In this document: positions 1-63,125 of the stretch, one piece after another
Layout of the letters: the number at the start of each line of letters is the position of its first letter
Position numbering within the stretch: position 1 is the stretch's first letter
Assembly (NCBI RefSeq): GCF_044704955.1
Contig: NC_091990.1
Coordinates: 156,674,001 to 156,738,000, forward strand
Reading direction: 5' to 3'
DNA from: Pristiophorus japonicus
Lineage: Eukaryota
DNA length: 64,000 nt
Program-made: the position numbers and the translations under genes
The notes under the pieces: model-generated
Seen by the model: the letters and a program-made list of their open reading frames with translations, nothing else
Databases searched by the model: none
Told to the model about the DNA's origin: nothing

Positions 1-613
1 GCTGGATGGTATCAAAAACAGAAAGTTCAAGGACAATGGGAGACAGTAAATCACACAAGTTGATGTACAGCATGTCAGTTGTGGCTTTGACCAAAGCCAT
101 GGATGGTGTGAAAGCAACATTAGAGTTCTCTCAAACAAGGAGTGATGGGAAAGATTGCATATAGCGCTGAAATTACATCAATATTGAAAATCTGAATATC
201 ACGACGACTAATTGTTTAAAAATTGTTCAACCTATCCTGTAATGCTGAATAAATTAGTTTACAATTACAGTAATGGACATCAAAACATAACTTTCACTAA
301 AAGTGTTCCAGGCGCGCAAGATTCAATTTAAGCATTGCTCACAAAACTAGACATGATTGTGATTTATGCACATACAAGTATGTTTTGCTTTTTATGTGGG
401 ATTCTAGTTTTTGGCACATTTTCTGAGTACTGATTACAAATTTATGATGATTTATTGCCAGAGTTGGTACATGTACAGTTTTGGATTAGGGAGTCTAGTT
501 TTTTGATCAGGTTGGTCAGAATATTCTAAAATGTAAACTTTGCACCAAAATGTTCTCTTTTTAAGTAATTTATTTCTCCCATTTAATTCTATGTTGCAAC
601 AGTTATTTACTGT

Positions 614-2044
614 GGGCTCAAAATTGGCCAGGAGTTGCTCCATTTTCTTTGGAGTAACTTGATTTTTCTGCAGTGTCTTAAAAATCCACATTTTACACAT
701 TCAATTTGCGCCAGTGTAAGTGAGTTCGTTAAGATTTTTTTTCAAGTTTTTTTTTCAAAAGGGGGCGTTACCAGCCACTTACGACCATTTTGGCCATTTA
801 AGCCACTTTGGCTAGCTAATAGTTACTCCAAACTAACTTAGGCTAGTGTATGTGGCCACTTGTGGCCGCTTGTGAAAATCCTTGTGGAGAGTTAAGAAAT
901 CACCGTAGGTAGTGGGTACATTGGAGGCCAGCAGAACTTAATGACTTGACTAAAGAATGTGAATAGGATCAAAGAGCTATACAGGACATCATATGACAAA
1001 CTTCGCAAAGTTAATTTACTATACAACAGAAGCATTCATGGAAGCTTAAACTACAAAAATAAAAGTAGTAAAGAGACAAAACATATTTACGTGATTTTTT
1101 CAAAATATCCAAATAAAAAATAGAAGTAAGTCCTACCCTACCTTCATCTGTAGCCCGGGAACATTACAGATTAATATAAACACTGACAGCAGCCAGTGAC
1201 AATCAATCAAACCAAGTGAAGATCCAGAATGGGGATTGCTTCTGAATGAATCCTCCCAGCGACGCAGCAAGTCCAGATTCCAGTCCCAGGGATCATCACT
1301 TTGGGATCAGCCTCAGGCTTGGGCTGATGAGTTTGAGGATGATTCTCCTTTTTCAGCAATGTTTGCTGGGCTGTAACCAGATTTCTTCTCTCCTCCTCTC
1401 TTCTTCCACCTAACGGTACCGATGACCAGAGCAATCAGGGCGACGGCAGCAATCACAATTCCAACAGTCAAAATGAGATTTGTTCCCTTTGGAGATCCGG
1501 GAGTCACTCGGAACGTCCCGTCCCAGTCTTGGTTCTTCACTCCTATGTTGTCACTCTGCTCATACTGACAGGAATAGGTGGCTCCATCCTCGGACTCGAT
1601 CTCAGCCCATCTTGTCAGCTGGTAGATTCCATCGTGGTTGGGCAGGATGCCATTGGATTCCGTGTCCGTGATCGGCTCGTGATTTCTCAGGAGGGTGACT
1701 TTGGTATCACGAGGGTAAAAGCCCGTGACGAGGCAGGAGAGTTAGGTCGGTTTATGGCCACTCGGCCTGGGATAGGGACGGGACACACACAGAGATGCTG
1801 GGGGCGAGGAACTATTGCGCATGCGCGCACACTCCAACGCGCATGTGCAGACATCCTGGCACTGTTTTCAGCGCGGGACACTGACTCCGCCCCCGACTCA
1901 ACTGGCCACGCTGCGCGAAGACCCGAGAGAGGCCAGACAGCGGCCAAAATCGGGACGTCTTTTTTTAGGCACGTTTGGAAACGTAGAAAAGTTGTGCAAA
2001 TCGGGTGAGTGCGCCAAAAATCAGCATGGGCCAATTTTGAGCCC
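614..2044. mobile_element. Non-autonomous TIR DNA transposon (Harbinger-like ends) carrying a captured MHC class I fragment
   Basis: Perfect 16-bp inverted repeats GGGCTCAAAATTGGCC (614-629) and GGCCAATTTTGAGCCC (2029-2044). The GGG..AAATT ends resemble the other Harbinger-type elements in the window. No transposase. Flanks are TGT/AAA, so there is no clean 3-bp TSD. Confidence 0.8.
1313..1741 (-). pseudogene. Processed (intron-less) MHC class I heavy-chain fragment: alpha3 Ig-C1 domain + connecting peptide + TM + cytoplasmic tail; probable 3' UTR continues to ~1150
   Basis: Manual minus-strand translation with no internal stop: LSCLVTGFYPRDTKVTLLRNHEPITDTESNGILPNHDGIYQLTRWAEIESEDGATYSCQYEQSDNIGVKNQDWDGTFRVTPGSPKGTNLILTVGIVIAAVALIALVIGTVRWKKRGGEKKSGYSPANIAEKGESSSNSSAQA*. 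It has the C1-set motifs CxxxGFYP, LPNxDGxYQ and YxC, a hydrophobic TM and a shark-type GYxPA...SSSNSS tail. An in-frame TAA (1742-1744) lies immediately upstream and there is no in-frame ATG. Confidence 0.92.
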
Positions 2045-2389
2045 AAAGTAACCATTGCACTTCAAAATCATGCTGTTACACAAAATGATATTTGAAAATG
2101 TGCATCATACACATATTTTGTATATCGTTAGAACAAGAGTGAGACAGGTAGGCAAGATGAAGAATGCCACACTGGAGAATGGAAAAAAAAATTGGACACC
2201 CCATGTCAGAATAAAACACTCTGACTTAAAATAGAGCACAGAACAGAGCCAGATTAAAGGGTTCTCTAATCTGCCCTATGTGCCTGAATTACAACCATAG
2301 AGAAGCACATCTATTCCACCATTTCTATTTTCAACAATTCTTATGCGTTGTAAGACATATTGCCAATTTAGTACTACATTATCATTCAT

Positions 2390-2665
2390 ATTGAGATCAA
2401 TAGATTTTTGGGCACTAAGGGAATCAGACGGTGTGAGATTGGGAAATGTTGATATTCAGAGGGACCTGGGTGTCCGTGTGCACAAATCACTGAAAGTTAA
2501 CATGCAGGTACAGCAAGCAATTAGGAAAGCAAATGGTATGTTAGCCTTTATTACAAAACGATTGGAATTTAAGAGGATAGAAGTCTCACTGCAGATATAT
2601 AGAGCCTTGGAGAATTGTGTAGTTTTGGTCTCCTTACCTAAGGAAGGAGATACTTGCCTTAGAGT
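2390..2665 (+). mobile_element. CR1 LINE ORF2 fragment
   Basis: QRDLGVRVHKSLKVNMQVQQAIRKANGMLAFI, the CR1 RT C-terminal region shared with the other copies here. Confidence 0.8.
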
Positions 2666-3300
2666 GAGTGCTTTCCTCCCTCAGCCTCTGCACTGAATGA
2701 CTTCTCATCCTTGGAGATTTCAACCCCCATCTCAATTCATCATGCTTTCTCTCCTCTGATTTCAATGCCTTCTAATCCTCCCTTAATCTTTCCCTCCATA
2801 TATAAACTCCCCGACCCATATTCATGGCCATCCCTTGTCCTTGCAATCTCACATGGCCTCGCTACTCCCATCGTGTCAATCACAGGTAAGGCCATCTATG
2901 ATCATTTTGCTGTATCGCTCTCCACCCACTTCCCCATCCCAACCCAATTTCTTTCTGTCCACCCCTGGAAAAAATTCTCTCCAAATTCACTAGCAACGAC
3001 ACTTTCAAAATCGTAATTGTCCAGCCTTTGGCCCTCCATTCATAATGTTTCTGCAGCTATTAATCTACTCAACCACACCCTCATTCCACATTTGATGCCC
3101 TAGACTCTATTAAAACCATTACTTTCTCTCACCCTGGCCGTTTATTTTCCCAGTATGGCCCTCATCTCCGCTCCCTAAGTCCAAGGGACGCAGACTTGAA
3201 TGGATATGGCGAACAACTGGTTTAGCCATTCACCGCCAGATCTGGCTGGACCACATAAAGCTGTCATCAACCCACGCCTAAAAAAAACCCAACTCTTGAC

Positions 3301-6599: not shown

Positions 6600-7250
6600 G
6601 TAAATAATGTACTATAACTGATGAAGGTATTGAAGTTGATGAATGAAAGACTAGTTGATATATTTTCAAAATGTCATTAATAAAGTGCAGCACAAAGTCC
6701 TCTAAGCAAGGCTGCAATATGCAGAATTGGTGGGCGGTTATTAGGCTGGATAAAATATTGATTGTATTTATGCAGCCTGATGGTAGCAGCTTTGCATGGG
6801 GATCAGTTACAAGTGGAATTTCACAAGCATCAGTGTTACTAATTTAGACAAGGGCATTGGAGGAGCAATTTTTAAGCTTGCAGATAACACAAAGATAGGT
6901 GTAAGGACTTCAGATGAAAAAATATGTTGCAGGTGGCATAGCACCAATGTCTCAAATATGTCATAATATGGACTAGTGTGGCATAATGTATATAGGCAGG
7001 GGCAATTCATAGCACATATATACCATGTGTGTATGGACACTAAAGGCTGATGAGCAGCAGCCAAAATTGGAATTATTGTGCATGAATCATTGCATGTCCA
7101 TGACAGGTTTGAGAGCTTAAGAAAATATGATTGAAGTCTTTAAAGTAATGAAAGGATTAGTTTCTTTCCACATGGACAGGTTACTTGGTAGGCAGGACAC
7201 AAATCGGGGACAGCAGTTCAAATTCCAAAAGCATTGTTAGTTTAGATGCT
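6600..7250 (+). mobile_element. Old, highly decayed CR1 fragment
   Basis: Scattered RT-like remnants (K-ADNTK-G, MIEVFKVMKG). Confidence 0.5.
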
Positions 7251-7261
7251 ACAAAGTACTT

Positions 7262-8951
7262 CCGGGGTCAGAGGATCTAGTAAGGAGGAGAAACTGAGGG
7301 AAATCTTTATTAGTCGGGAAATTGTGTTGGGGAAATTGATGGGATTGAAGGCCGATAAATCCCCAGGGCCTGATGAACTGCATCCCAGAGTACTTAAGGA
7401 GGTGGCCTTGCAAATAGCGGATGCATTGACAGTCATTTTCCAACATTTCCAACATTCCATTGACTCTGAATCAGTTCCTATCGAGTGGAGGGTAGCCAAT
7501 GTAACCCCACTTTTTAAAAAAGGAGGGAGAGAGAAAACAGGGAATTATAGATCGGTCAGCCTGACATCGGTAGTGGGTAAAATGATGGAATCAATTATTA
7601 AGGATGTCATAGCAGCGCATTTGGAAAGAGGTGACATGATAGGTCCAAGTCAGCATGGATTTGTGAAAGGGAAATCATGCTTGACAAATCTTCTGGAATT
7701 TTTTGAGGATGTTTCCAGTAGAGTGGACAAGGGAGAACCAGTTGATGTGGTATATTTGGACTTTCAGAAGGCTTTCGACAAGGTCCCACACAAGAGATTA
7801 ATGTGCAAAGTTAAAGCACATGGGATTGGGGGTAGTGTGCTGACATGGATTGAGAACTGGTTGTCAGACAGGAAGCAAAGAGTAGGAGTAAATGGGTACT
7901 TTTCAGAATGGCAGGCAGTGACTAGTGGGGTACCACAAGGTTCTGTGCTGGGGCCCCAGCTGTTTACACTGTACATTAATGATTTAGACGTGGGAATTAA
8001 ATGTAGTATCTCCAAATTTGCGGATGACACTAAGTTGGGTGGCAGTGTGAGCTGCGAGGAGGATGCTATGAGGCTGCAGAGCGACTTGGATAGGTTAGGT
8101 GAGTGGGCAAATGCATGGCAAATGAAGTATAATGTGGATAAATGTGAAGTTATCCACTTTGGTGGTAAAAACAGAGAGACAGACTATTATCTGAATGGTG
8201 ACAGATTAGGAAAAGGGGAGGTGCAACGAGACCTGGGTGTCATGGTACATCAGTCATTTAAGGTTGGCATGCAGGTACAGCAGGCGGTTAAGAAAGCAAA
8301 TGGCATGTTGGCCTTCATAGCGAGGGGATTTGAGTACAGGGGCAGGGAGGTGTTGCTACAGTTGTACAGGGCCTTGGTGAGGCCACACCTGGAGTTTTTG
8401 TGTACAGTTTTGGTCTCCTAACCTGAGGAAGGACACTCTTGCTATTGAGGGAGTGCAGGGAAGGTTCACCAGACTGATTCCCGGGATGGCGGGACTGACC
8501 CATCAAGAAAGACTGGATCAACTGGGCTTGTATTCACTGGAGTTCAGAAGAATGAGAGGAGACCTCATAGAAACGTTTAAAATTCTGATGGGTTTAGACA
8601 GGTTAGATGCAGGAAGAATGTTCCCAATGTTGGGGAAGTCCAGAACCAGGGGTCACAGTCTAAGGATAAGGGGTAAGCCATTTAGGACTGAGATGAGGAG
8701 AAACTTCTTCACCCAGAGAGTGGTGAACCTGTGGAATTCTCTACCACAGAAAGTTGTTGAGTCCAATTCACTAAATATATTCAAAAAGGAGTTAGATGAA
8801 GTCCTTACTACTAGGGAGATCAAGGGGTATGGCGAGAAAGCAGGAATGGGGTACTGAAGTTGCATGTTCAGCCAGGAACTCATTGAATGGCGGTGCAGGC
8901 TAGAAGGGCCGAATGGCCCACTCCTGCACCTATTTTCTATGTTTCTATGTT
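7262..8951 (+). mobile_element. Young 5'-truncated CR1 LINE (RT domain and 3' UTR)
   Basis: ORFs 7246-8421 and 8453-8857: KSPGPDELHP, YLDFQKAFDKV, GVPQGSVLGP, KFADDTK, one frameshift near 8400, tail (GTTTCTAT)n. Confidence 0.97.
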
Positions 8952-44685: not shown

Positions 44686-46780
44686 ATGAGAGCAGGAAGG
44701 AGGGCAAATAGGTTTACAGATGTGGAGCTCGAGACCCTGATTGCAAGGTGTGGAGGGTAGACAGCCAGTAATGTGGGGAGACCAAGCAGACAGGTGATAA
44801 ATAACTGCTGGAATGAGATAGCAGAGTTGGTGTCAGGCACCTCGATATATCAGAGGACACCAGTGCATTCTGGAAGAGATTCCACCAACTGCCGACCTTG
44901 CATCCGCGACACTCTCCTTCAACATGCTCTTATTTCCCATACTCACTGTTTAGTCACTCAACCAACATTTCATTTTTCACGCTTCTATATTTTTGTGTGT
45001 GTGTTCTCACAATGGAGGCTCCCGTTTATCTCACACTTTCAGCTGCAGGTCATGGACAAACACTTGTGCACACATTCCTAATGCGTCATCACAGTCATAC
45101 TCAACAACCATGCTTTCTTTTGCAGGCTAAATTGGCACACAATAGAGGTGCGCGAAGGATGACCGGTGATGGTGATGCAGACATACAGGGGCTCACACCT
45201 TTAGAGCAGAGGGCTCAGATCGGCGGCCATGCTGTATTTCCTGTGGCTGACGGTCGTGCAGCCATCGAAGTGGGTAAGTGACATCTCTCCTTCAATGCGC
45301 CAGCGCCTACCATTCCTTTCCTTCATGGAAGTCTGCTAGTTGCATCCTCCATGACTTCATCCCCCATGACTTCATCCCCCACCTCCCCCTCACGGCAGCC
45401 CTTCTCCCATTTATGCTTGCAGATGACATTCCCCCTGTGGGCAGCGGAACTGGCGACACCGATATGGGCAGCATGGGTAAGTGAGGCCTTCGTTGAATGT
45501 GCTCGTTACTTGAATGCGCCAGTGTCGACTGTGCTTTTCTGTCCAAAGAGTGCTAGTTGCAGGCTCCATGCGTCAATCCCCCACCTCCCCCTCACGGTAA
45601 ACCTTCTCCCATTTATGCTTGCAGATGAAACACGGAGTGGCAGCACAGCACAAATGGACACACCACCTGCAGACCTGAAGCACAGGCCTGTGGACAAAAG
45701 CCCTCCAATCTCGACCAGCACTGATGATGACATTGAGGCCTCAAGCGATGGAGATCTTCGTCAGCACTCCCCGGCTCATCCAGACAACTGATGAGGGATG
45801 AAGAGGGATGAGGGATGAAGAGGGATGAGGGATGATGAGGGGTGAGGGATGATGAGGGGTGAGGGATGATGAGGGGTGAGGGGTGAGGGGTGACACAGTG
45901 GCACAAGCGCGTCACTGCTTCCACCCACACATGCCAACTCAAATACTGGCGGGAGCGCGTGGTCTGAAGTAGTTGAGATGGTAGGTGGGGCAGCACTGGG
46001 TGTTGCATCAGGGACTAGCGAGCTGCAGCATGGTGATAGGGCTAGGCAACCTTAGTTGCCACCTCTCCCGGGGGGTGCCGGGAGTCTGCACCGGAGTTCT
46101 GTTGACAAGGACTCAGATGATGCCATCGATGTATTGGCTTACGAGAGAAGGGTGGAGGCCATGCATTCCCAGGTGTTGGGGGCACTGGCAAAGGTGCCAG
46201 AGAGCCTGTCGGAAGTGGTGAAGAGCATGGAGTAGTCCGCCACCTGCATATTCGACAGCTCTGCGCACTCCACGTAGCCCATCATTGCCAGTGTGCAGAC
46301 GATGGTGGGCTCCCAGGTTGTCCATGCGAATCCAACTGTGCTGTAACCTGCAGGTGATGTGGCAGCTGCCATTTCAGCACAGGCATGAGCGAACAATCGC
46401 ATCGGTGCTGGAATGGAGAGGATTGCTGCGGCCCTGGAAGCTCAGAATGTTCTTATGCTCTCTGGGCAACAGGCCACGGAGCATCTTACTGCTGCCATCT
46501 CTGGTGGATTGGAAACTGTGGCTGCTCTTATGCAGTCTCAGCTCGATGCCACCAGACACCTCAGTGTTGCATCCGCAGCTGGGACCAACACGGGCCGCAA
46601 GGAACCTTCCAGTTTCATGCCGCTGCACCGACCTGACCTCGCTCACCTTGGTGGTGGTGTAAGGTGCCGCCCCGCGGGGAGTGATGCAGACTCCTCAGAC
46701 CAGGATCTTGATGATGTGCTCTCAGGATCACAGCATTCCTGGCCCCCGACCTCCACACATGGTTCCACCCGAGCCACTAC
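44686..46780 (+). pseudogene. Harbinger Myb/SANT-like DNA-binding protein gene (multi-exon, frameshifted)
   Basis: MRAGRRANRFTDVELETLI...CWNEIAELVSGTSIYQRT; ttgcag|AKLAHNRGARRMTGDG...LTPLEQR; 3' end approximate. Confidence 0.75.
45790..45892. repeat. GATGAGG/GATGAGGGG simple repeat
   Basis: Tandem GATGA(G)n units visible directly. Confidence 0.9.
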
Positions 46781-46782
46781 CT

Positions 46783-47805
46783 TCCTTTTCAGAATGGCAG
46801 GCAGTGACTAGTGGGGTACCGCAAGGTTCAGTGCTGGGACCCCAGCTATTTACAATATACATCAATGATTTGGACGAAGGAATTGAATGTAATATCTCCA
46901 AGTGTGCAGATGACACTAAGCTGGGTGGCAGCGTGAGCTGTAAGGAGGATGCTAAGAGGCTGCAGGGTGACTTGGACAGGTTAGTTGAGTGGGCAAATAC
47001 ATGGCAGATGCGGTATAATGTTGATAAATGTGAGGTTATCCACTTTGGTGGTAAAAACAGGAAGGCAGATTATTATCTGAATGGTGTCTGCTTAGTAAAG
47101 GGGGAGGTGCAACGAGACCCGGGTGTCATGGTTCATCAGTCATTGAAAGTTGCCATACAGGTACAGCAGGCGGTGAAGGCGGCAAATGGCATGTTGGCCT
47201 TCATAGCGAGAGGATTTGAGTATAGGAGCAGGGAGGTCTTACTGCAGTTGTACAAGGCCTTGGTAAGGCCACACCTGGAGTATTGTGTGCAGTTTTGGTC
47301 TCCTAATCTGAGGAAGGACATTCTTGCTATTGAGGGAGTGCAGCGAAGGTTCACCAGGCTGATTCCCGGGATGACAAGACTGACATATGAAGAAAGACTG
47401 GATCGATTAGGCTTATATTCAATGGATTTTAGAAGAATTAGATTCTGACTGGATTGGACAGATTAGATGCAGGAAGAATGTCCCCGATGTTGGGGGAAGT
47501 CCAGAACCAGTGGTCACAGTCTAAGGATAAGGGGTAAGCCATTTAGGACTGAGATGAGGAGAAACTTCTTCACTCAGAGAATTGTGAACCTGTGGAATTC
47601 TCCACCGCAGAGAGTTGTCGAAGCCAGTTCGTTAGATATATTCAAAAGGGAGTTAGATGTGGCCCTTAAGGCTAAAGGGATCAAGGGATATGGAGAGAAA
47701 GCAGGAATGGGGTACTGAAGTTGCATGATCAGCCATGATCATATTGAATGGTGGTGCAGGCTCGAAGGGCCAAATGGCCTGCTCCTGCACCTATTTTTTA
47801 TGTTT
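46783..47805 (+). mobile_element. 5'-truncated CR1 LINE inside the Harbinger element
   Basis: FSEWQAVTSGVPQGSVLGP...RRNFFTQR and the 3' UTR. Confidence 0.95.
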
Positions 47806-48235: not shown

Positions 48236-49288
48236 CTACACCTCCCTTGCAGGATGGCGAGGAGGACGACGCCTCCTAGCTCGGTGGCGACTGGGATCCT
48301 CCTCCACATCAGGTGGCACTGCTAGTTCGACCTCCAGCAGCTGGCCCCTCAGGACGGCCAGATTGAGCAGCATGCAGCAGACCACCATGAATATGGAGAC
48401 CTGCTGAGGAGAGTACTGCAAGGTGCCACCAGAGCGGTTCAGGCAACGGAACCTCTGCTTAAGGATCCCAATGCAGTGCTCGATGATGTACCTGGTGGCA
48501 CAATGAGCGTCATTGTATGCATGCTCTGGCGCTGTCCTGGGGTTCTGCAGTGGAGTGAGCAACCAGGTGGACAGGGGATATCCCTTGTCCCCAAGCAGCC
48601 AACCGCAATCCTGATTCGGGTCGGTGAAGAGGGCAGGCAAACTGGTCTGGCGCAGAAGGAAGGAATCATGGCTGCTTCCTGGGTACTTCGCATCAACTGC
48701 CAGGATCCGACGCTGGTGGTCACACACAAGCTGCAGATTTAGCAAGTGGAAGCCCTTGCAGTTCACAAAGATCTTGGGGTGATGCCGTGGTGCCCTCAGC
48801 CCAACGTGTGTGCAGTCTATCGCATCCTGCACCCTCGGGAAGCCTGCAATTCGGGCAAATCCATCCTGCGCTGCACCTCCTTGTCCCTCGTCATAGGGAA
48901 AGAGATGTCCTGCAACCTTCTCCTGTAGAGTGCATCTGTGACCTGCCGAATGCACCAACGTGCGGAGAATTGCGGGATGTTGCCAATGTCTGCAGTGGCA
49001 GACTAGAAAGACCATGTGGCATAAAATTTCAAGGCGATGGTCACCTTGGTATCTACGATCAGGGCAGTCCTCAGCGTTGAGGGGCTGGAGATCTTCGTGC
49101 AGGACAGTATAGAGCTCCCCGAGTACGTCTTTCCTAAATCTTAAGCCTTCGCAGGCATTGCTCATCACTGAGCTGGAGGAAGGAGAACCGAGGCCTATAG
49201 ACCCTTTGAGGGTAGGGCCTCCTTCCCCCACCTCTGCGTTGGCCACCTCCCCTGGCAGCTGGATGATGTCCATCTCCCTCCTGGCCAC
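48236..49288 (-). pseudogene. Harbinger (HARBI1-like) DDE transposase; C-terminal half in frame, N-terminal half frameshifted
   Basis: GFPRVQDAIDCTHV, NCKGFH.LN.Q.VCD, YPGSSHDS, WLLGDKGYP, YN.AH..TR.IIE...G.LK.RFRCL. Confidence 0.92.
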
Positions 49289-58489: not shown

Positions 58490-61400
58490 AAAGCAGGGAA
58501 GTATAGACCAGTTAGCTTAACATCTGTCGCTGGGAAAATGCTGGAGTCCATTATTAAGGAAGCAGTAGCAGGACATTTGGAAAAGCATGATTCAACATGG
58601 TTTTATGAAGGGGATGTCATGTTTGACAAATTTGCTGGAGTTCTTTAAGGATGTAATGAGCAGGGTGGATAAGGGGGGACCAGTGGATGTGGTGTATTTG
58701 GACTTCCAGAAGGCTTGCACAAGATAAAAGTTCACAGGGTTGGGAGTAATATATTAACATGGAGAGAGGATTGGCTAACTAACAGAAAACAGAGAGTCGA
58801 GATTAAGACGTCATTTTCCGGTTGGTAAACAGTAACTAGTGGGAGGCCGCAGAGATCAGTGCTGGGGCCTCAACTATTTACAATCTATATTAATGACTTG
58901 GATGAAGGAACTGAGTGTAATGTAGCCAAATTTTCTGATGATACAAAGATGGGTGGGAGAGCAAATTGTAAGGAGGTCACAATAAATCTGCAAAGGGATA
59001 CAGACAGGCGAGGTGAGTGGGCAATGATTTGGCAGATAGAAACATAGAAACATAGAAAATAGGTGCAGGAGTGGGCCATTCGGCCCTTCTAGCCTGCACC
59101 ATCATTCAATGAGTTCATGGCTGAACATGCAACTTCAGTACCCCATTCCTGCTTTCTCACTTTACCCCTTGATTCCCCTAGTAGTAAGGACTTCATCTAA
59201 CTCCTTTTTGAATATATTTAGTGAATTGGCCTCAACAACTTTCTGTGGTAGAGAAATTCCTCCTCATCTCAGTCCTAAATGGCTCCCCCCTTATCCTTAG
59301 ACTGTGTCCCCTGGTTTTGGACTTCCCCAACATTGGGAACATTCTTCCTGCATCTAACCTGTCTAACCCCGTCAGAATTTTAAACGTTTCTATGAGGTCC
59401 CCTCTCATTCTTCTGAACGCCAGTGAATACAAGCCCAGTTGATCCAGTCTTTCTTGATAGGTCAGTCCCGCCATCCCAGGAATCAGTCTGGTGAACCTTC
59501 GCTGCACTCCCTCAATAGCAAGAATGTCCTTCCTCAGGTTAGGAGACCAAAACTGTACACAATACTCCAGGTGTGGCCTCACCAAGGCCCTGTACAATTG
59601 TAGCAACACCTCCCTGCCCTTGTACTCAAATCCCCTCGCTATGAAGGCAAACATGCCATTTGCTTTCTTAACCGCCTGCTGTACCTGCATGCCAACCTTC
59701 AATGACTGATGTACCATGACACCCAGGTCTCTTTGCACCTCCCCTTTTCCTAATCTGTCACCATTCAGATAATAGTCTGTCTCTCTGTTTTTACCACCAA
59801 AGTGGATAACCTCACATTTATCCACATTATACTTCATCTGCCATGCATTTGCCCACTCACCTAACCTATCCAAGTCGCTCTGCAGCCTCATAGCATCCTC
59901 CTCACAGCTCACACTGCCACCCAACTTAGTGTCATCCGCAAATTTGGAGATACTACATTTAATCCCCTCGTCTAAATCATTAATGTACAGTGTAAACAGC
60001 TGGGGCCCCAGCACAGAACCTTGCAGTACCCCACTAGTCACTGCCTACCATTCTGAAAAGTCCCCATTTACTCCTACTCTTTGCTTCCTGTCTGACAACC
60101 AGTTCTCAATCCATGTCAGCACACTACCCCCAATCCCATGTGCTTTAACTTTGCACATTAATCTCTTGTGTGGGACCTTGTCGAAAGCCTTCTGAAAGTC
60201 CAAATATACCACATCAACTGGTTCTCCCTTGTCCACTCTACTGGAAACATCCTCAAAAAATTCCAGAAGATTTGTCAAGCATGATTTCCCTTTCACAAAT
60301 CCATGCTGACTTGGACCTATCATATTACCTCTTTCCAAATGCACTGCTATGACATCCTTAATAATTGATTCCATCATTTTACCCACTACTGATGTCAGGC
60401 TGACCTGTCTATAATTCCCTGTTTTCTCTCTCCCTCCTTTTTTAAAAAGTGGGGTTACATTGGCTACCCTCCACTCCATAGGAACTGATCCAGAGTCAAT
60501 GGAATGTTGGAAAATGACTGTCAATGCATCCACTATTTCCAAGGCCACCTCCTTAAGTACTCTGGGATGCAGTCCATCAGGCCCTGGGGATTTATCGGCC
60601 TTCAATCCCATCAATTTCCCCAACACAATTTCCCGACTAATAAGGATTTCCCTCAGTTCCTCCTCCTTACTAGACCCTCCGACCCCTTTTATATCCGGAA
60701 GGTTGTTTGTGTCCTCCTCAGTGAATACCGAACCAAAGTACTTGTTCAATTGGTCCGCCATTTCTTTGTTCCCCGTTATGACTTCCCCTGATTCTGACTG
60801 CAGGGGACCTACGTTTGTCTTTACTAACCTTTTTCTCTTTACATATCTATAGAAACTTTTGCAATCCGTCTTAATGTTCCCTGCAAGCTTCTTCTCGTAC
60901 TCCATTTTCCCTGCCCTAATCAAACCCTTTGTCCTCCTCTGCTGAGTTCTAAATTTCTCCCAGTCCCCGGATTCGCTGCTATTTCTGGCCAATTTGTATG
61001 CCACTTCCTTGGCTTTAATGCTATCCCTGATTTCCCTTGATAGCCACGGTTGAGCCACCTTCCCTTTTTTATTTTTACGACAGACAGGAATGTACAATTG
61101 TTGTAGTTCATCCATGCGGTCTCTAAATGTCTGCCATTGCCTATCCACAGTCAACCCCTTCAGTATCATTTGCCAATCTATCCTAGCCAATTCACGCCTC
61201 ATACCTTCAAAGTTACCCTTCTTTAAGTTCTGGACCATGGTCTCTGAATTAACTGTTTCATTCTCCATCCTAATGCAGAATTCCACCATATTATGGTCAC
61301 TCTTCCCCAAGGGGCCTCGCACAACGAGATTGCTAATTAATCCTCTCTCATTACACAACACCCAGTCTAAGATGGCCTCCCCCCTAGTTGGTTCCTCGAC

Positions 61401-63125
61401 ATATTGGTCTAAAAAACCATCCCTTATGCACTCCAGGAAATCCTCCTCTACCGTATTGCTTCCAGTTTGGTTAACCCAATCTATGTGCATATTAAAGTCA
61501 CCCATTATAACTGCTGCACCTTTATTGCACGCACCCCTAATTTCATGTTTGATGCCCTCCCCAACATCACTACTACTGTTTGGAGGTCTGTACACAACTC
61601 CCACTAACGTTTTTTGTCCTTTGGTATTCTGCAGCTCTACCCATATAGATTCCACATCATCCAAGCTAATGTCCTTCCGAACTATTGCCTTAATTTGCTC
61701 CTTAACCAGCAATGCTACCCCACCTCCTTTTCCTTTTATTCTATCTTTCCTGAATGTTGAATACCCCTGGATGTTGAGTTCCCAGCCCTGATCATCCTGG
61801 AGCCACGTCTCCGTAATCCCAATCACATCATATTTGTTAACATCTATTTGCACAATTAATTCATCCACTTTATTGCAGATACTCCTTGCATTAAGACACA
61901 AAGCCTTCAGGCTTGTTCTTTTAACACCCTTTGTCCTTTTAAAATTTTGCTGTACAGTGGCCCTTTTTGTTCTTTGTCTTGGGTTTCTCTGCCCTCCACT
62001 TTTCCTCATCTCCTTTCTGTCTTTTGCTTTTGCCTCCTTTTTGTTTCCCTCTGTCTCCCTGCATTGGTTCCCATCCCCCTGCCATATCAGTTTAAATCCT
62101 CCCCAACAGCACTAGCAAACACTCCCCCTAGGACATTGGTTCCGGTCCTGCCCAGGTGCAGACCGTCCGGTTTGTACTGGTCCCACCTCCCCCAGAACTG
62201 GTTCCAATGCCCCAGGAATTTGAATCCCTCCCTGTTGCACCACTGCTCAAGCCACGTATTCATCTGCGCTATCCTGCGATTCCTACTCTGACTATCATGT
62301 GGCACTGGTAGCAATCCCGAGATGCCCTATAGTGTGGGAAAATGAGAGGTTATCCACTTCGGCAGAAAAAAATAGAAAAACAAATAATAATTTAAATGCA
62401 GAAAAAATGCAAAGTGCAGCAGTACAGCGGGACCTGGGGGTCCTTGTACATGAAACACAAAACGTTAGTATGCAGGTACAGCAAGTGATCAGGAAGGCAA
62501 ATGGAATAGTAGCCTTTATTGCAAAGGAGCTGGAGTATAAAAGCAGACAAGTCCTGCTACAACTGTACAGCGCATTGGTGAGGCCACACCTGGAGTAATG
62601 TGTATAGTTTTGATCTCCATATTTAAGGAAGGATATACTTGCAATGGAGGCTGTTCAGAGAAGGTTCACTAGGTTGATTCTGGAGATGAGGGGGTTGACT
62701 TATGAAGATAGGTTGAGCCTATACACATTGGAGTTCAGAAGATCTTATCAAAACATATAAGGTAATGAGGGGGCTCGACAAGGTGGATGCAGAGAGGATA
62801 TTTCCACTCATAGAGGAAACTAAAACTAGGGGGCATAGTCTCAGGATAAGGGGCCGCCCATTTAAAACTGAGATGAGGAGGAATTTCTTCTCTCAGAGGG
62901 TTGTAAGTCTGTGGAATTCTCTGTCCCAGAGAGCTGTGGAGACTGGGTCATTGAATATATTTATGGCGGAGATAGACAGATTTTTAGGCAATAAGGGAAT
63001 AAGGAGTTATGGGGAGCGGACAGGGGAGCTGAGTCCATGATCAGATCAGCCATGATCTTATTGAATGGCAGAGCAGGCTCGAGGTGCAAAATGGCATACT
63101 CCTGCTACTATTTCTTATGTTCTTT
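58490..63125 (+). mobile_element. CR1 fragment (58490-59035 and 62325-63125) split by a younger antisense CR1
   Basis: RT reads ...GEWAMIWQ and resumes at ~62325 with the following (Y)SVGK-EVIHFG region through to the 3' UTR. Confidence 0.88.
59036..62320 (-). mobile_element. Young, nearly complete CR1 LINE: end of ORF1 (SGNH esterase-like) plus ORF2 (APE + RT)
   Basis: ORF1 tail 62087-62314 (PDGLHL); ORF2 60045-62009 plus 59232-60041, separated by one in-frame TAG; small deletion near the 3' end; (ATAGAAAC)n tail. Confidence 0.97.

What the first reader, a model, noticed from the sequence alone, without database searches (positions are those of the whole stretch)
614..2044. A TIR DNA transposon carrying a spliced MHC class I cargo (Pack-TIR of an adaptive-immunity gene)
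Seen: perfect 16-bp TIRs enclose about 600 bp (~1150-1741, minus strand) encoding most of an MHC class I alpha3 domain, TM, cytoplasmic tail and stop, plus probable 3' UTR, all contiguous. Established: class I heavy-chain genes normally have introns between the alpha3, TM and cytoplasmic exons, so the cargo looks mRNA-derived. The neighbourhood (TM7SF3) is not MHC. There is no poly(A) tract or separate TSD around the cargo, which argues against an ordinary LINE-made retrocopy landing in a MITE. Inference: a non-autonomous Harbinger-like element captured a processed class I sequence and may have spread it genome-wide. That would create many MHC-I-like loci that could confound MHC annotation, donate a ready TM/tail module to other genes, or produce antisense/small RNAs against class I mRNA.
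Basis: partly seen in the sequence, partly recalled or inferred. Interest (0 to 1): 0.92.

Follow-up and report, generated by a model that had tools for sequence, protein, structure and literature searches.

The report
Shark transposon carrying dead MHC-I fragment
A small, very abundant cut-and-paste transposon in a shark genome has had its middle replaced by a 584-base, intron-free and non-functional piece of an MHC class I gene. This is a vertebrate example of a known kind of gene-fragment-carrying ("Pack") transposon, not a new immune gene.

Summary
Perfect 16-bp TIRs (614-629 / 2029-2044) bound a 1.43-kb element. On the minus strand, 1313-1741 is a 142-codon open frame. It is 82% identical to the C-terminus of a Pristiophorus japonicus class I heavy chain: partial alpha3, TM, tail and stop.

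Public contigs of the same species show three things:
- The flanks are single copy.
- The arms belong to a MITE with thousands of copies, most of which have 15-38 nt where the cargo sits.
- The cargo (refined to 1160-1743) matches an abundant RNA-like contig that runs on past 1160.

The cargo is therefore an internal fragment, cut at both ends, with no poly(A). It is not a LINE retrocopy. It crosses three intron positions inferred from horn-shark isoforms.

The "captured mRNA" reading is not required. DNA contigs at about 5-8 copies are already intron-free across the same junctions, and a scan note reports single-exon class I genes in this genome. Ordinary DNA-level template switching during break repair is sufficient.

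The scan noted at least four similar MHC-I-bearing elements (1357-1464 bp) on other DNA of this genome. That favours post-capture spread, but I could not confirm shared junctions. I found no evidence of function.

The parts
607..629 (+). Left terminal inverted repeat (perfect core 614-629; extended match from 607)
614..1159 (.). Left arm of a very abundant MITE family (AT-rich, 37.5% GC). It includes the A/T-rich tract at 733-760, which belongs to the family and is not a cargo poly(A).
   Evidence: summed contig depth is 5.7e4-2.6e5 against 9 in the flanks. for GC content.
1160..1743 (-). Cargo: a 584-bp internal fragment of an intron-free MHC class I sequence (50% GC)
   Evidence: class I-like contigs align from 1160 and stop at 1743. 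The RNA-like contig rec19 is collinear over 1160-1690 and runs on beyond 1160..
1523..1741 (-). Alpha3 (C1-set) domain lacking about its first 19-20 codons; residues L1-W73 of the frame
1397..1522 (-). Connecting peptide plus transmembrane segment (residues 74-115). It equals the 42-residue block skipped in H. francisci isoform X4.
1313..1396 (-). Cytoplasmic tail (residues 116-142) and TGA stop (1313-1315). It crosses the position of the 13-residue exon skipped in H. francisci isoform X2.
1160..1312 (-). First 153 nt of the class I 3'UTR, cut short. RNA-like contigs continue beyond it by a median of 162 nt.
   Evidence: loose end at 1160, rec19
1744..1755 (.). 12-nt linker between the cargo and the right arm, probably a remnant of the family's GC-rich centre
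   Evidence: joints land at 1756, with between-letters ending ...TGTGCGGTA. The identification as a remnant is inference.
1756..2044 (.). Right arm of the MITE (GC-rich). It starts with GGCCACTCGGCC (1756-1767), the reverse complement of the motif that another scan note called the family's capture site.
   Evidence: joints to 1756/1757; depth up to 1.3e5; scan note s1-874693
2029..2051 (-). Right terminal inverted repeat (perfect core 2029-2044)

Best explanation
This is a Pack-type non-autonomous TIR transposon.

Shown: an ordinary member of a very abundant MITE family, roughly 0.86 kb by subtraction, lost about 12-25 nt of its GC-rich centre. In their place it gained a 584-bp internal piece of an intron-free MHC class I sequence.

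Inferred mechanism: a double-strand break or gap inside the element was repaired with a template switch (synthesis-dependent, microhomology-primed). The break could come from abortive gap repair after excision or from a stalled fork. The left junction lies at 1160/1161, where arm-like and cargo-like matches overlap by about 2 nt. A short linker remains at the right junction.

Inferred donor (about 60:40): the template was most likely DNA of an intron-free class I retrogene, which this genome carries in several copies, rather than an mRNA or cDNA.

Inferred spread (about 70%): the composite kept both ends and was probably moved in trans by the family's transposase. That would give a small subfamily of MHC-I-bearing copies.

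The cargo itself is dead. It has no alpha1/alpha2 domains, no start codon or leader, and a stop codon directly upstream. It is about 11% diverged at the nucleotide level.
For: - TIRs and their uniqueness in the window.
- Single-copy flanks (depth 9/5), arms at 1e4-3e5, and cargo at 114-620 in the DNA runs.
- Eleven listed joint rows run from 1137-1161 to 1756/1757 with 15-38 other letters between them. Most family members therefore lack the cargo, and both arms belong to one element.
- Class I identity and collinearity.
- Internal fragment: the RNA-like contig rec19 (663 nt, 89% identical) is collinear over 1160-1690 and continues past 1160. Contigs rec6/14/31 stop exactly at 1743, and rec6/14 carry 777 nt further upstream that do not match the right arm.
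- Intron positions: H. francisci isoforms skip exactly the TM block (42 aa) and a 13-aa tail block, and one isoform reads through after ...DW. The cargo is continuous across all three positions.
- Intron-free DNA templates exist: DNA contigs rec4/12 (1269-1472, no gaps, depth 44/58, about 5-8 copies) cross the tail junctions. This agrees with scan note s1-874703.
- Another MITE-linked class I copy exists: the joint 1527->1761 in DNA contigs links the TM/tail part to the right arm in a different structure.
- Dead cargo: upstream stop. An open frame is expected by chance in 19-44% of simulations at 5-11% substitution.
- No transposase domain in the arm ORFs.
- Other loci: scan notes s1-877408, s1-874478, s1-877520 and s1-876478 report elements of 1464, 1357, 1428 and 1427 bp carrying the same kind of cargo.
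Against: - Shared junctions, and therefore post-capture transposition, are not demonstrated here.
- At several cargo sites (e.g. 1174, 1359, 1410, 1467) no DNA contig carries this copy's own letter. This probably reflects rare-variant dropping by the contig builder, but it means the interior of this locus is not independently confirmed by reads.
- No TSD is evident beside the 16-bp core.
- DNA contig depth across the cargo points to tens of copies. That is hard to square with about five sightings in roughly 20 Mb, unless the scan's windows are not a random sample or many copies are under 85% identical.
- The order of events (retrogene first, capture second) is inferred.
Confidence: 0.6

Rival explanations
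1. Direct capture of a spliced class I mRNA or cDNA at the break (RNA-templated repair, or a reverse-transcribed fragment used as template or filler).
For: The cargo is intron-free across three to four junction positions. It is collinear with a highly abundant RNA-like contig. Scan notes report a class II alpha cDNA-like cargo in the same family (s1-877413) and several class I retrocopies, so cDNA of these genes was evidently available in the germ line.
Against: Intron-free class I DNA at about 5-8 copies exists in the same genome (rec4/12; note s1-874703), so a DNA donor is sufficient. Nothing in the junctions is specific to an RNA template.
Confidence: 0.3
2. A one-off event at this locus. 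The fragment was pasted into a resident MITE in situ and never moved. The other MHC-bearing MITEs are independent events at a fragile centre.
For: No same-junction copy could be shown here. The family centre is variable in many copies (many different joints and fillers). A follow-up on a sister locus (s1-874478) reached the same conclusion.
Against: Four other noted elements are 1357-1464 bp long, against 1431 here. A separately noted cargo is 584 letters long, equal to the 584 bp measured here. Independent captures would not be expected to give the same size.
Confidence: 0.2
3. An ordinary LINE-made, 5'-truncated processed pseudogene that landed inside a MITE.
For: The cargo is intron-free and 5'-truncated. 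LINE ORFs are present in the window. An A/T-rich tract lies at 733-760.
Against: The cargo stops inside the 3'UTR, whereas RNA-like contigs continue a median of 162 nt further. There is no poly(A) and no TSD at its ends. The tract at 733-760 lies in the arm at depth 2.6e5 and so belongs to the MITE. About 12-25 nt of the MITE centre was replaced rather than duplicated.
Confidence: 0.03
4. An assembly chimera that joins a MITE and a class I sequence.
For: No listed contig spans the element, and at some cargo sites this copy's letters are absent from the DNA contigs.
Against: Both arm-flank junctions are confirmed with 0 mismatches (rec1, rec8). Both arms are collinear with cargo-free relatives. 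Similar composites are noted at other loci. Contig builders drop rare variants.
Confidence: 0.03

Closest known systems
Pack-TIRs of animals (Tan et al. 2021, Nat Commun 12:4280, PMC8277862) and Pack-MULEs of plants
   Same: A non-autonomous TIR element with intact ends and a host-gene fragment in the middle. Origin is proposed to be template switching during gap filling or fork stalling, with possible later amplification.
   Different: The cargo is intron-free. That survey deliberately discarded intron-free captures of multi-exon genes as possible retroduplicates, so this class is under-sampled. The paper does not mention sharks (0 occurrences). The cargo here is a class I antigen-presentation gene.
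ARF6 retrogene inside a MER20 transposon (human case in PMC8277862)
   Same: A retro-derived, intron-free gene sequence enclosed by a DNA transposon.
   Different: That case holds an almost complete retrogene, and the authors could not exclude recurrent retroposition. Here the fragment is cut at both ends inside the transcript, which excludes simple retroposition.
Templated or filler insertions at repaired double-strand breaks, including cDNA capture (yeast Ty1 cDNA capture, templated sequence insertions in mammals; cited from my own knowledge, not checked here)
   Same: A short stretch is replaced by a copy of distant sequence, with little or no homology at the junctions.
   Different: Here the break lies inside a mobile element, so the product can in principle be spread.
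LINE-mediated processed pseudogenes of MHC class I
   Same: Intron-free and non-functional.
   Different: No poly(A) or LINE tail, no TSD, and 3'-truncated.

Membership tests
Pack-TIR (transduplicating non-autonomous TIR element) | Terminal inverted repeats at both ends | tested here: met
   16/16 perfect and 22/23 extended
Pack-TIR (transduplicating non-autonomous TIR element) | Arms belong to a repeated TIR family whose other members lack the insert | tested here: met
   Arm depth is 1e4-3e5 against 9 in the flanks. Joints 1137-1161 -> 1756 have 15-38 nt between them.
Pack-TIR (transduplicating non-autonomous TIR element) | Internal sequence derived from a non-TE host gene that exists elsewhere | tested here: met
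   82% identity to a P. japonicus class I protein. Class I-like DNA and RNA-like contigs extend beyond both cargo ends. The parental locus itself was not located.
Pack-TIR (transduplicating non-autonomous TIR element) | Target-site duplication flanking the element | tested here: inconclusive
   The flanks are tgt/aaa beside the 16-bp core, and TA/TA or TTA/TAA if the ends are 610/2048.
Pack-TIR (transduplicating non-autonomous TIR element) | Multicopy: the same composite at several loci with different flanks | tested here: inconclusive
   Only unchecked scan notes report other loci. My data show multi-copy cargo-like DNA and one different MITE-linked form (1527->1761), but no same-junction copy.
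PIF/Harbinger MITE (Tourist-like) | 3-bp TWA target-site duplication | tested here: inconclusive
   TTA on the left and TAA on the right are both TWA but are not identical. A 2-bp TA duplication (Tc1/mariner or Stowaway-like) fits this copy without any mutation.
PIF/Harbinger MITE (Tourist-like) | Ends shared with an autonomous element encoding a DDE_Tnp_4 transposase and a Myb-like protein | tested here: not met
   An intact DDE_Tnp_4 ORF lies at 48236-49288, but its surroundings share no sequence or TIR with this element. The true partner could not be sought in the rest of the genome.
LINE-made processed pseudogene | Copy reaches the mRNA 3' end with a poly(A) or LINE tail, and has its own TSD | tested here: not met
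MHC class I heavy-chain gene (functional) | Leader, alpha1 and alpha2 groove domains, and a complete alpha3 | tested here: not met
   The frame starts at alpha3 residue 20 or so with a stop just upstream. No other Pfam domain was found.

The most novel reading that the evidence does not exclude
The MITE family has a break-prone centre that repeatedly takes up spliced transcripts of highly expressed antigen-presentation genes (class I here, class II alpha at another noted locus) by RNA- or cDNA-templated repair, and then spreads them. This would make it a recurrent vertebrate Pack transposon for immune-gene mRNAs. It would sit alongside an unusual burst of class I retrogenes and retrocopies in the sawshark genome.
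Probability: 0.15. Interest if true: 0.75.

Novelty: new member of a known kind. Interest (0 to 1): 0.42.

Why it matters
- It is a clean vertebrate example of a DNA transposon that took up a host-gene fragment. It belongs to the intron-free class that the main animal survey filtered out, so such cases may be more common than the published counts suggest.
- Copies like this will appear as spurious class I alpha3/TM hits when shark MHC genes are annotated or counted.
- Read together with the scan's other notes, it suggests that class I sequence in this shark has been copied around by several transposon routes. That broader pattern, rather than this single dead fragment, is the part worth following up.

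Tried and rejected
- My first alternative was a retrocopy running to the A/T-rich tract at 733-760. I rejected it because that tract lies in the arm at depth 2.6e5 and because the class I match ends at 1160.
- No other copy of the element or its arms occurs in the 64-kb window.
I therefore could not read the gene structure of the shark class I genes or other loci, and used isoform skipping patterns as a proxy.
- A protein search with the ORF spanning the cargo/right-arm junction (1529-2005 +), meant to fish out same-junction copies, found nothing. This is uninformative.
- The search of earlier findings by sequence returned nothing.
- The open 142-codon frame is not evidence of selection.
- There is no Rfam family in 1-3000, and no notable DNA hairpin at the right edge of the slot (z -1.06).
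- The cargo-free centre itself was not folded, because it exists only as typed letters in a tool output.
- The DDE_Tnp_4 ORF at 48236-49288 is not this MITE's partner by sequence.
- The TM7SF3 context was not verified (one search failed; no exon search was done).
- Literature searches found no report of MHC fragments in shark transposons.

Full report
**1. What is in the sequence**

The 16-mer GGGCTCAAAATTGGCC lies at 614-629 on the plus strand and at 2029-2044 on the minus strand. It occurs nowhere else in the window at up to two mismatches (0.08 hits expected). The inverted repeat extends outward to 607-629 / 2029-2051 with one mismatch.

On the minus strand, 1741->1313 is an open frame of 142 codons. 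It ends in TGA and is preceded by an in-frame stop. Its first 61 residues are an immunoglobulin C1-set domain (Pfam 2.8e-12). The nearest solved structures are CD1c and nurse-shark MHC class I 6lup.

The best protein match among all those fetched is a Pristiophorus japonicus class I heavy chain, P0161. It is 81.7% identical over all 142 residues (E 2e-79). Next come a second P. japonicus protein, Squalus acanthias class I, and a Heptranchias protein, at 75-77%.

The alignment is collinear. It starts about 19-20 residues into alpha3 (…PTQ|LSCLVTGFYP…), runs through the connecting peptide, transmembrane segment and tail, and ends at the shared C-terminus …SSNSSAQA. The genome is therefore that of a squalomorph shark. 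Scan notes name it as the Japanese sawshark, which fits the best hit.

**2. What the rest of the genome says**

I laid Logan contigs of four public runs of the same species on window 200-2500.

- **DNA runs X1 and X3, flanks.** Depth at 200-584 and 2125-2355 is 9 and 5-7, so the flanks are single copy. Contigs match them with 0 mismatches and run 25-28 nt into the element at both ends.
- **DNA runs, arms.** The arms (585-1123 and about 1740-1893) reach 1e4-3e5, so this is a MITE with thousands of copies.
- **Cargo-free relatives.** Eleven listed joint rows go from 1137-1161 straight to 1756/1757 with 15-38 other letters between them (for example GGCAGCGGGCCGTCCTGTGCGGTA). Most family members therefore lack the insert, and the two arms are halves of one element. 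By subtraction that element is roughly 0.86 kb.
- **The slot.** 1756-1767 reads GGCCACTCGGCC. This is the reverse complement of the motif another scan note (s1-874693) called the family's capture site. The insert thus sits in the same slot as the cargos noted elsewhere.

**3. Limits and nature of the cargo**

Class I-like contigs align from 1160 and stop at 1743.

- A 663-nt contig of run X5 is collinear with 1160-1690 at 89% identity. It continues beyond 1160; the loose ends there have a median length of 162 nt.
- X5 and X6 have no depth on the flanks. X6 reaches 35,000-190,000 on the cargo. They are therefore most likely RNA runs, but this is inference because the record gives no kind.
- A 961-nt DNA contig (depth 46/59) stops matching at 1743 and carries 777 nt further upstream that do not match the right arm.

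The cargo is therefore a 584-bp internal piece of a class I transcript-like sequence. Its 5' end is cut inside alpha3 and its 3' end is cut inside the 3'UTR. There is no poly(A) or T-run beside 1160 and no duplication around the cargo.

About 12-25 nt of the MITE centre is missing. Twelve nucleotides (1744-1755) remain as a linker. At the left junction, arm-like and cargo-like matches overlap by about 2 nt (1160-1161).

This is the signature of a break repaired with a template switch. It is not the signature of target-primed reverse transcription.

**4. Is it 'spliced'?**

As a proxy I used NCBI's isoforms of the closest Heterodontus francisci gene:

- One isoform skips exactly the 42-residue connecting-peptide/TM block.
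- One skips a 13-residue tail block.
- One reads through after …DW.

These mark introns at positions matching window coordinates of about 1523/1522, 1397/1396 and 1358/1357. The cargo is continuous across all three.

A single-copy DNA contig breaks at 1318, just before the stop codon. This may mark a fourth intron in one paralogue.

**5. But mRNA capture is not required**

In the DNA runs, a 205-nt contig (185 nt in X3) at depth 44/58, about 5-8 times single copy, covers 1269-1472 without gaps. That DNA is already intron-free across the tail junctions. Two single-copy DNA contigs (1160-1466 and 1185-1466) are intron-free as well, and the first of them extends past 1160.

A scan note with a follow-up (s1-874703) reports an intact single-exon class I gene in at least six near-identical copies in this genome. 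Other notes report class I retrocopies. My depth data agree with this, though I could not read those loci.

I therefore favour ordinary DNA-level capture from a retrogene (about 60:40) over cDNA or RNA capture.

**6. Did the composite spread?**

*Evidence in favour.* The scan's first readers noted elements of 1464, 1357, 1428 and 1427 bp with a 'spliced MHC class I fragment' on other pieces of this genome. They also noted a cargo of 584 letters, which is the cargo length I measured here. Cargo-like DNA is multi-copy: 8-17 distinct contigs per site, with summed depth 13-60 times single copy. One DNA form joins the TM/tail part at 1527 to the right arm at 1761, which is a different MITE-linked class I structure.

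*Evidence against, or missing.* The notes are unchecked. I saw no second copy with the same junctions. The one contig crossing 1160 (X5 rec18) has only 17 nt on the arm side. A protein search for junction-spanning ORFs was blank. A depth of tens of copies fits poorly with about five sightings in roughly 20 Mb, unless the scan's windows are not a random sample. I put post-capture mobilisation at about 70%.

**7. Function**

No function is indicated.

- The frame lacks a start codon, a leader and the groove domains, and follows a stop codon.
- Staying open is expected by chance in 19-44% of simulations at 5-11% substitution.
- The arm ORFs have no Pfam domain.
- The RNA-like runs do not cover the flanks of this locus.
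- There is no Rfam family in the region.

**8. Superfamily**

Directly beside the 16-bp core the flanks are tgt and aaa. If the ends are placed at 610/2048, the flanks are TA/TA, or TTA/TAA. This copy alone cannot decide between a TA duplication and a mutated TWA (Harbinger) duplication.

A 350-aa DDE_Tnp_4 ORF lies at 48236-49288. It shares nothing with this element.

**9. Comparison with the literature**

Pack-TIRs are known in animals (PMC8277862). That survey discarded intron-free captures and does not mention sharks. I found no report of MHC fragments in shark transposons. I therefore class this as a new member of a known kind.

**Caveats**

- At several cargo sites no DNA contig carries this copy's own letter. 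I attribute this to contig builders dropping rare variants, but it means the interior of this locus is not confirmed by reads.
- The TM7SF3 neighbourhood was not checked.

Noticed in passing
window 48236-49288 (-): An intact 350-aa ORF with a DDE_Tnp_4 domain (PF13359, 9.7e-33). It is either a PIF/Harbinger-type transposase or a HARBI1-like domesticated gene. No clear TIRs were found around it, and it has no similarity to the MITE at 614-2044.
   Followed up: partly
window 60045-62009 (-), 59232-60041 (-), 7246-8421 (+), 46681-47448 (+): LINE-type ORFs. One is a 654-aa endonuclease plus reverse transcriptase ORF; the others are RT fragments. The window is rich in retroelements that could make retrocopies.
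   Followed up: no
window 2356-2700: Another extremely abundant repeat starts about 310 bp to the right of the element (contig depth 1e4-3e5 from 2356 on). The ORF at 2343-2696 has no Pfam match.
   Followed up: no
protein P0006 (XP_067865201, Heterodontus francisci, 'CD1d2-like', 214 aa): This gene model looks chimeric. Its N-terminus has no class I alpha1/alpha2 similarity and may be transposon-derived. It is followed by a class I alpha3-TM-tail on a 74-Mb chromosome. This hints that class I 3' fragments outside the MHC also occur in the horn shark.
   Followed up: no
window 1160-1743 versus public runs X1/X3: DNA contigs show a 3'-biased excess of class I-like copies: depth is about 370-620 over the 3'UTR and tail, against 110-230 over alpha3. 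Several indel variants are present (4-bp deletion at 1207, insertion at 1230, and skips of 34 and 50 nt), so degenerate class I copies exist besides the intact genes.
   Followed up: partly
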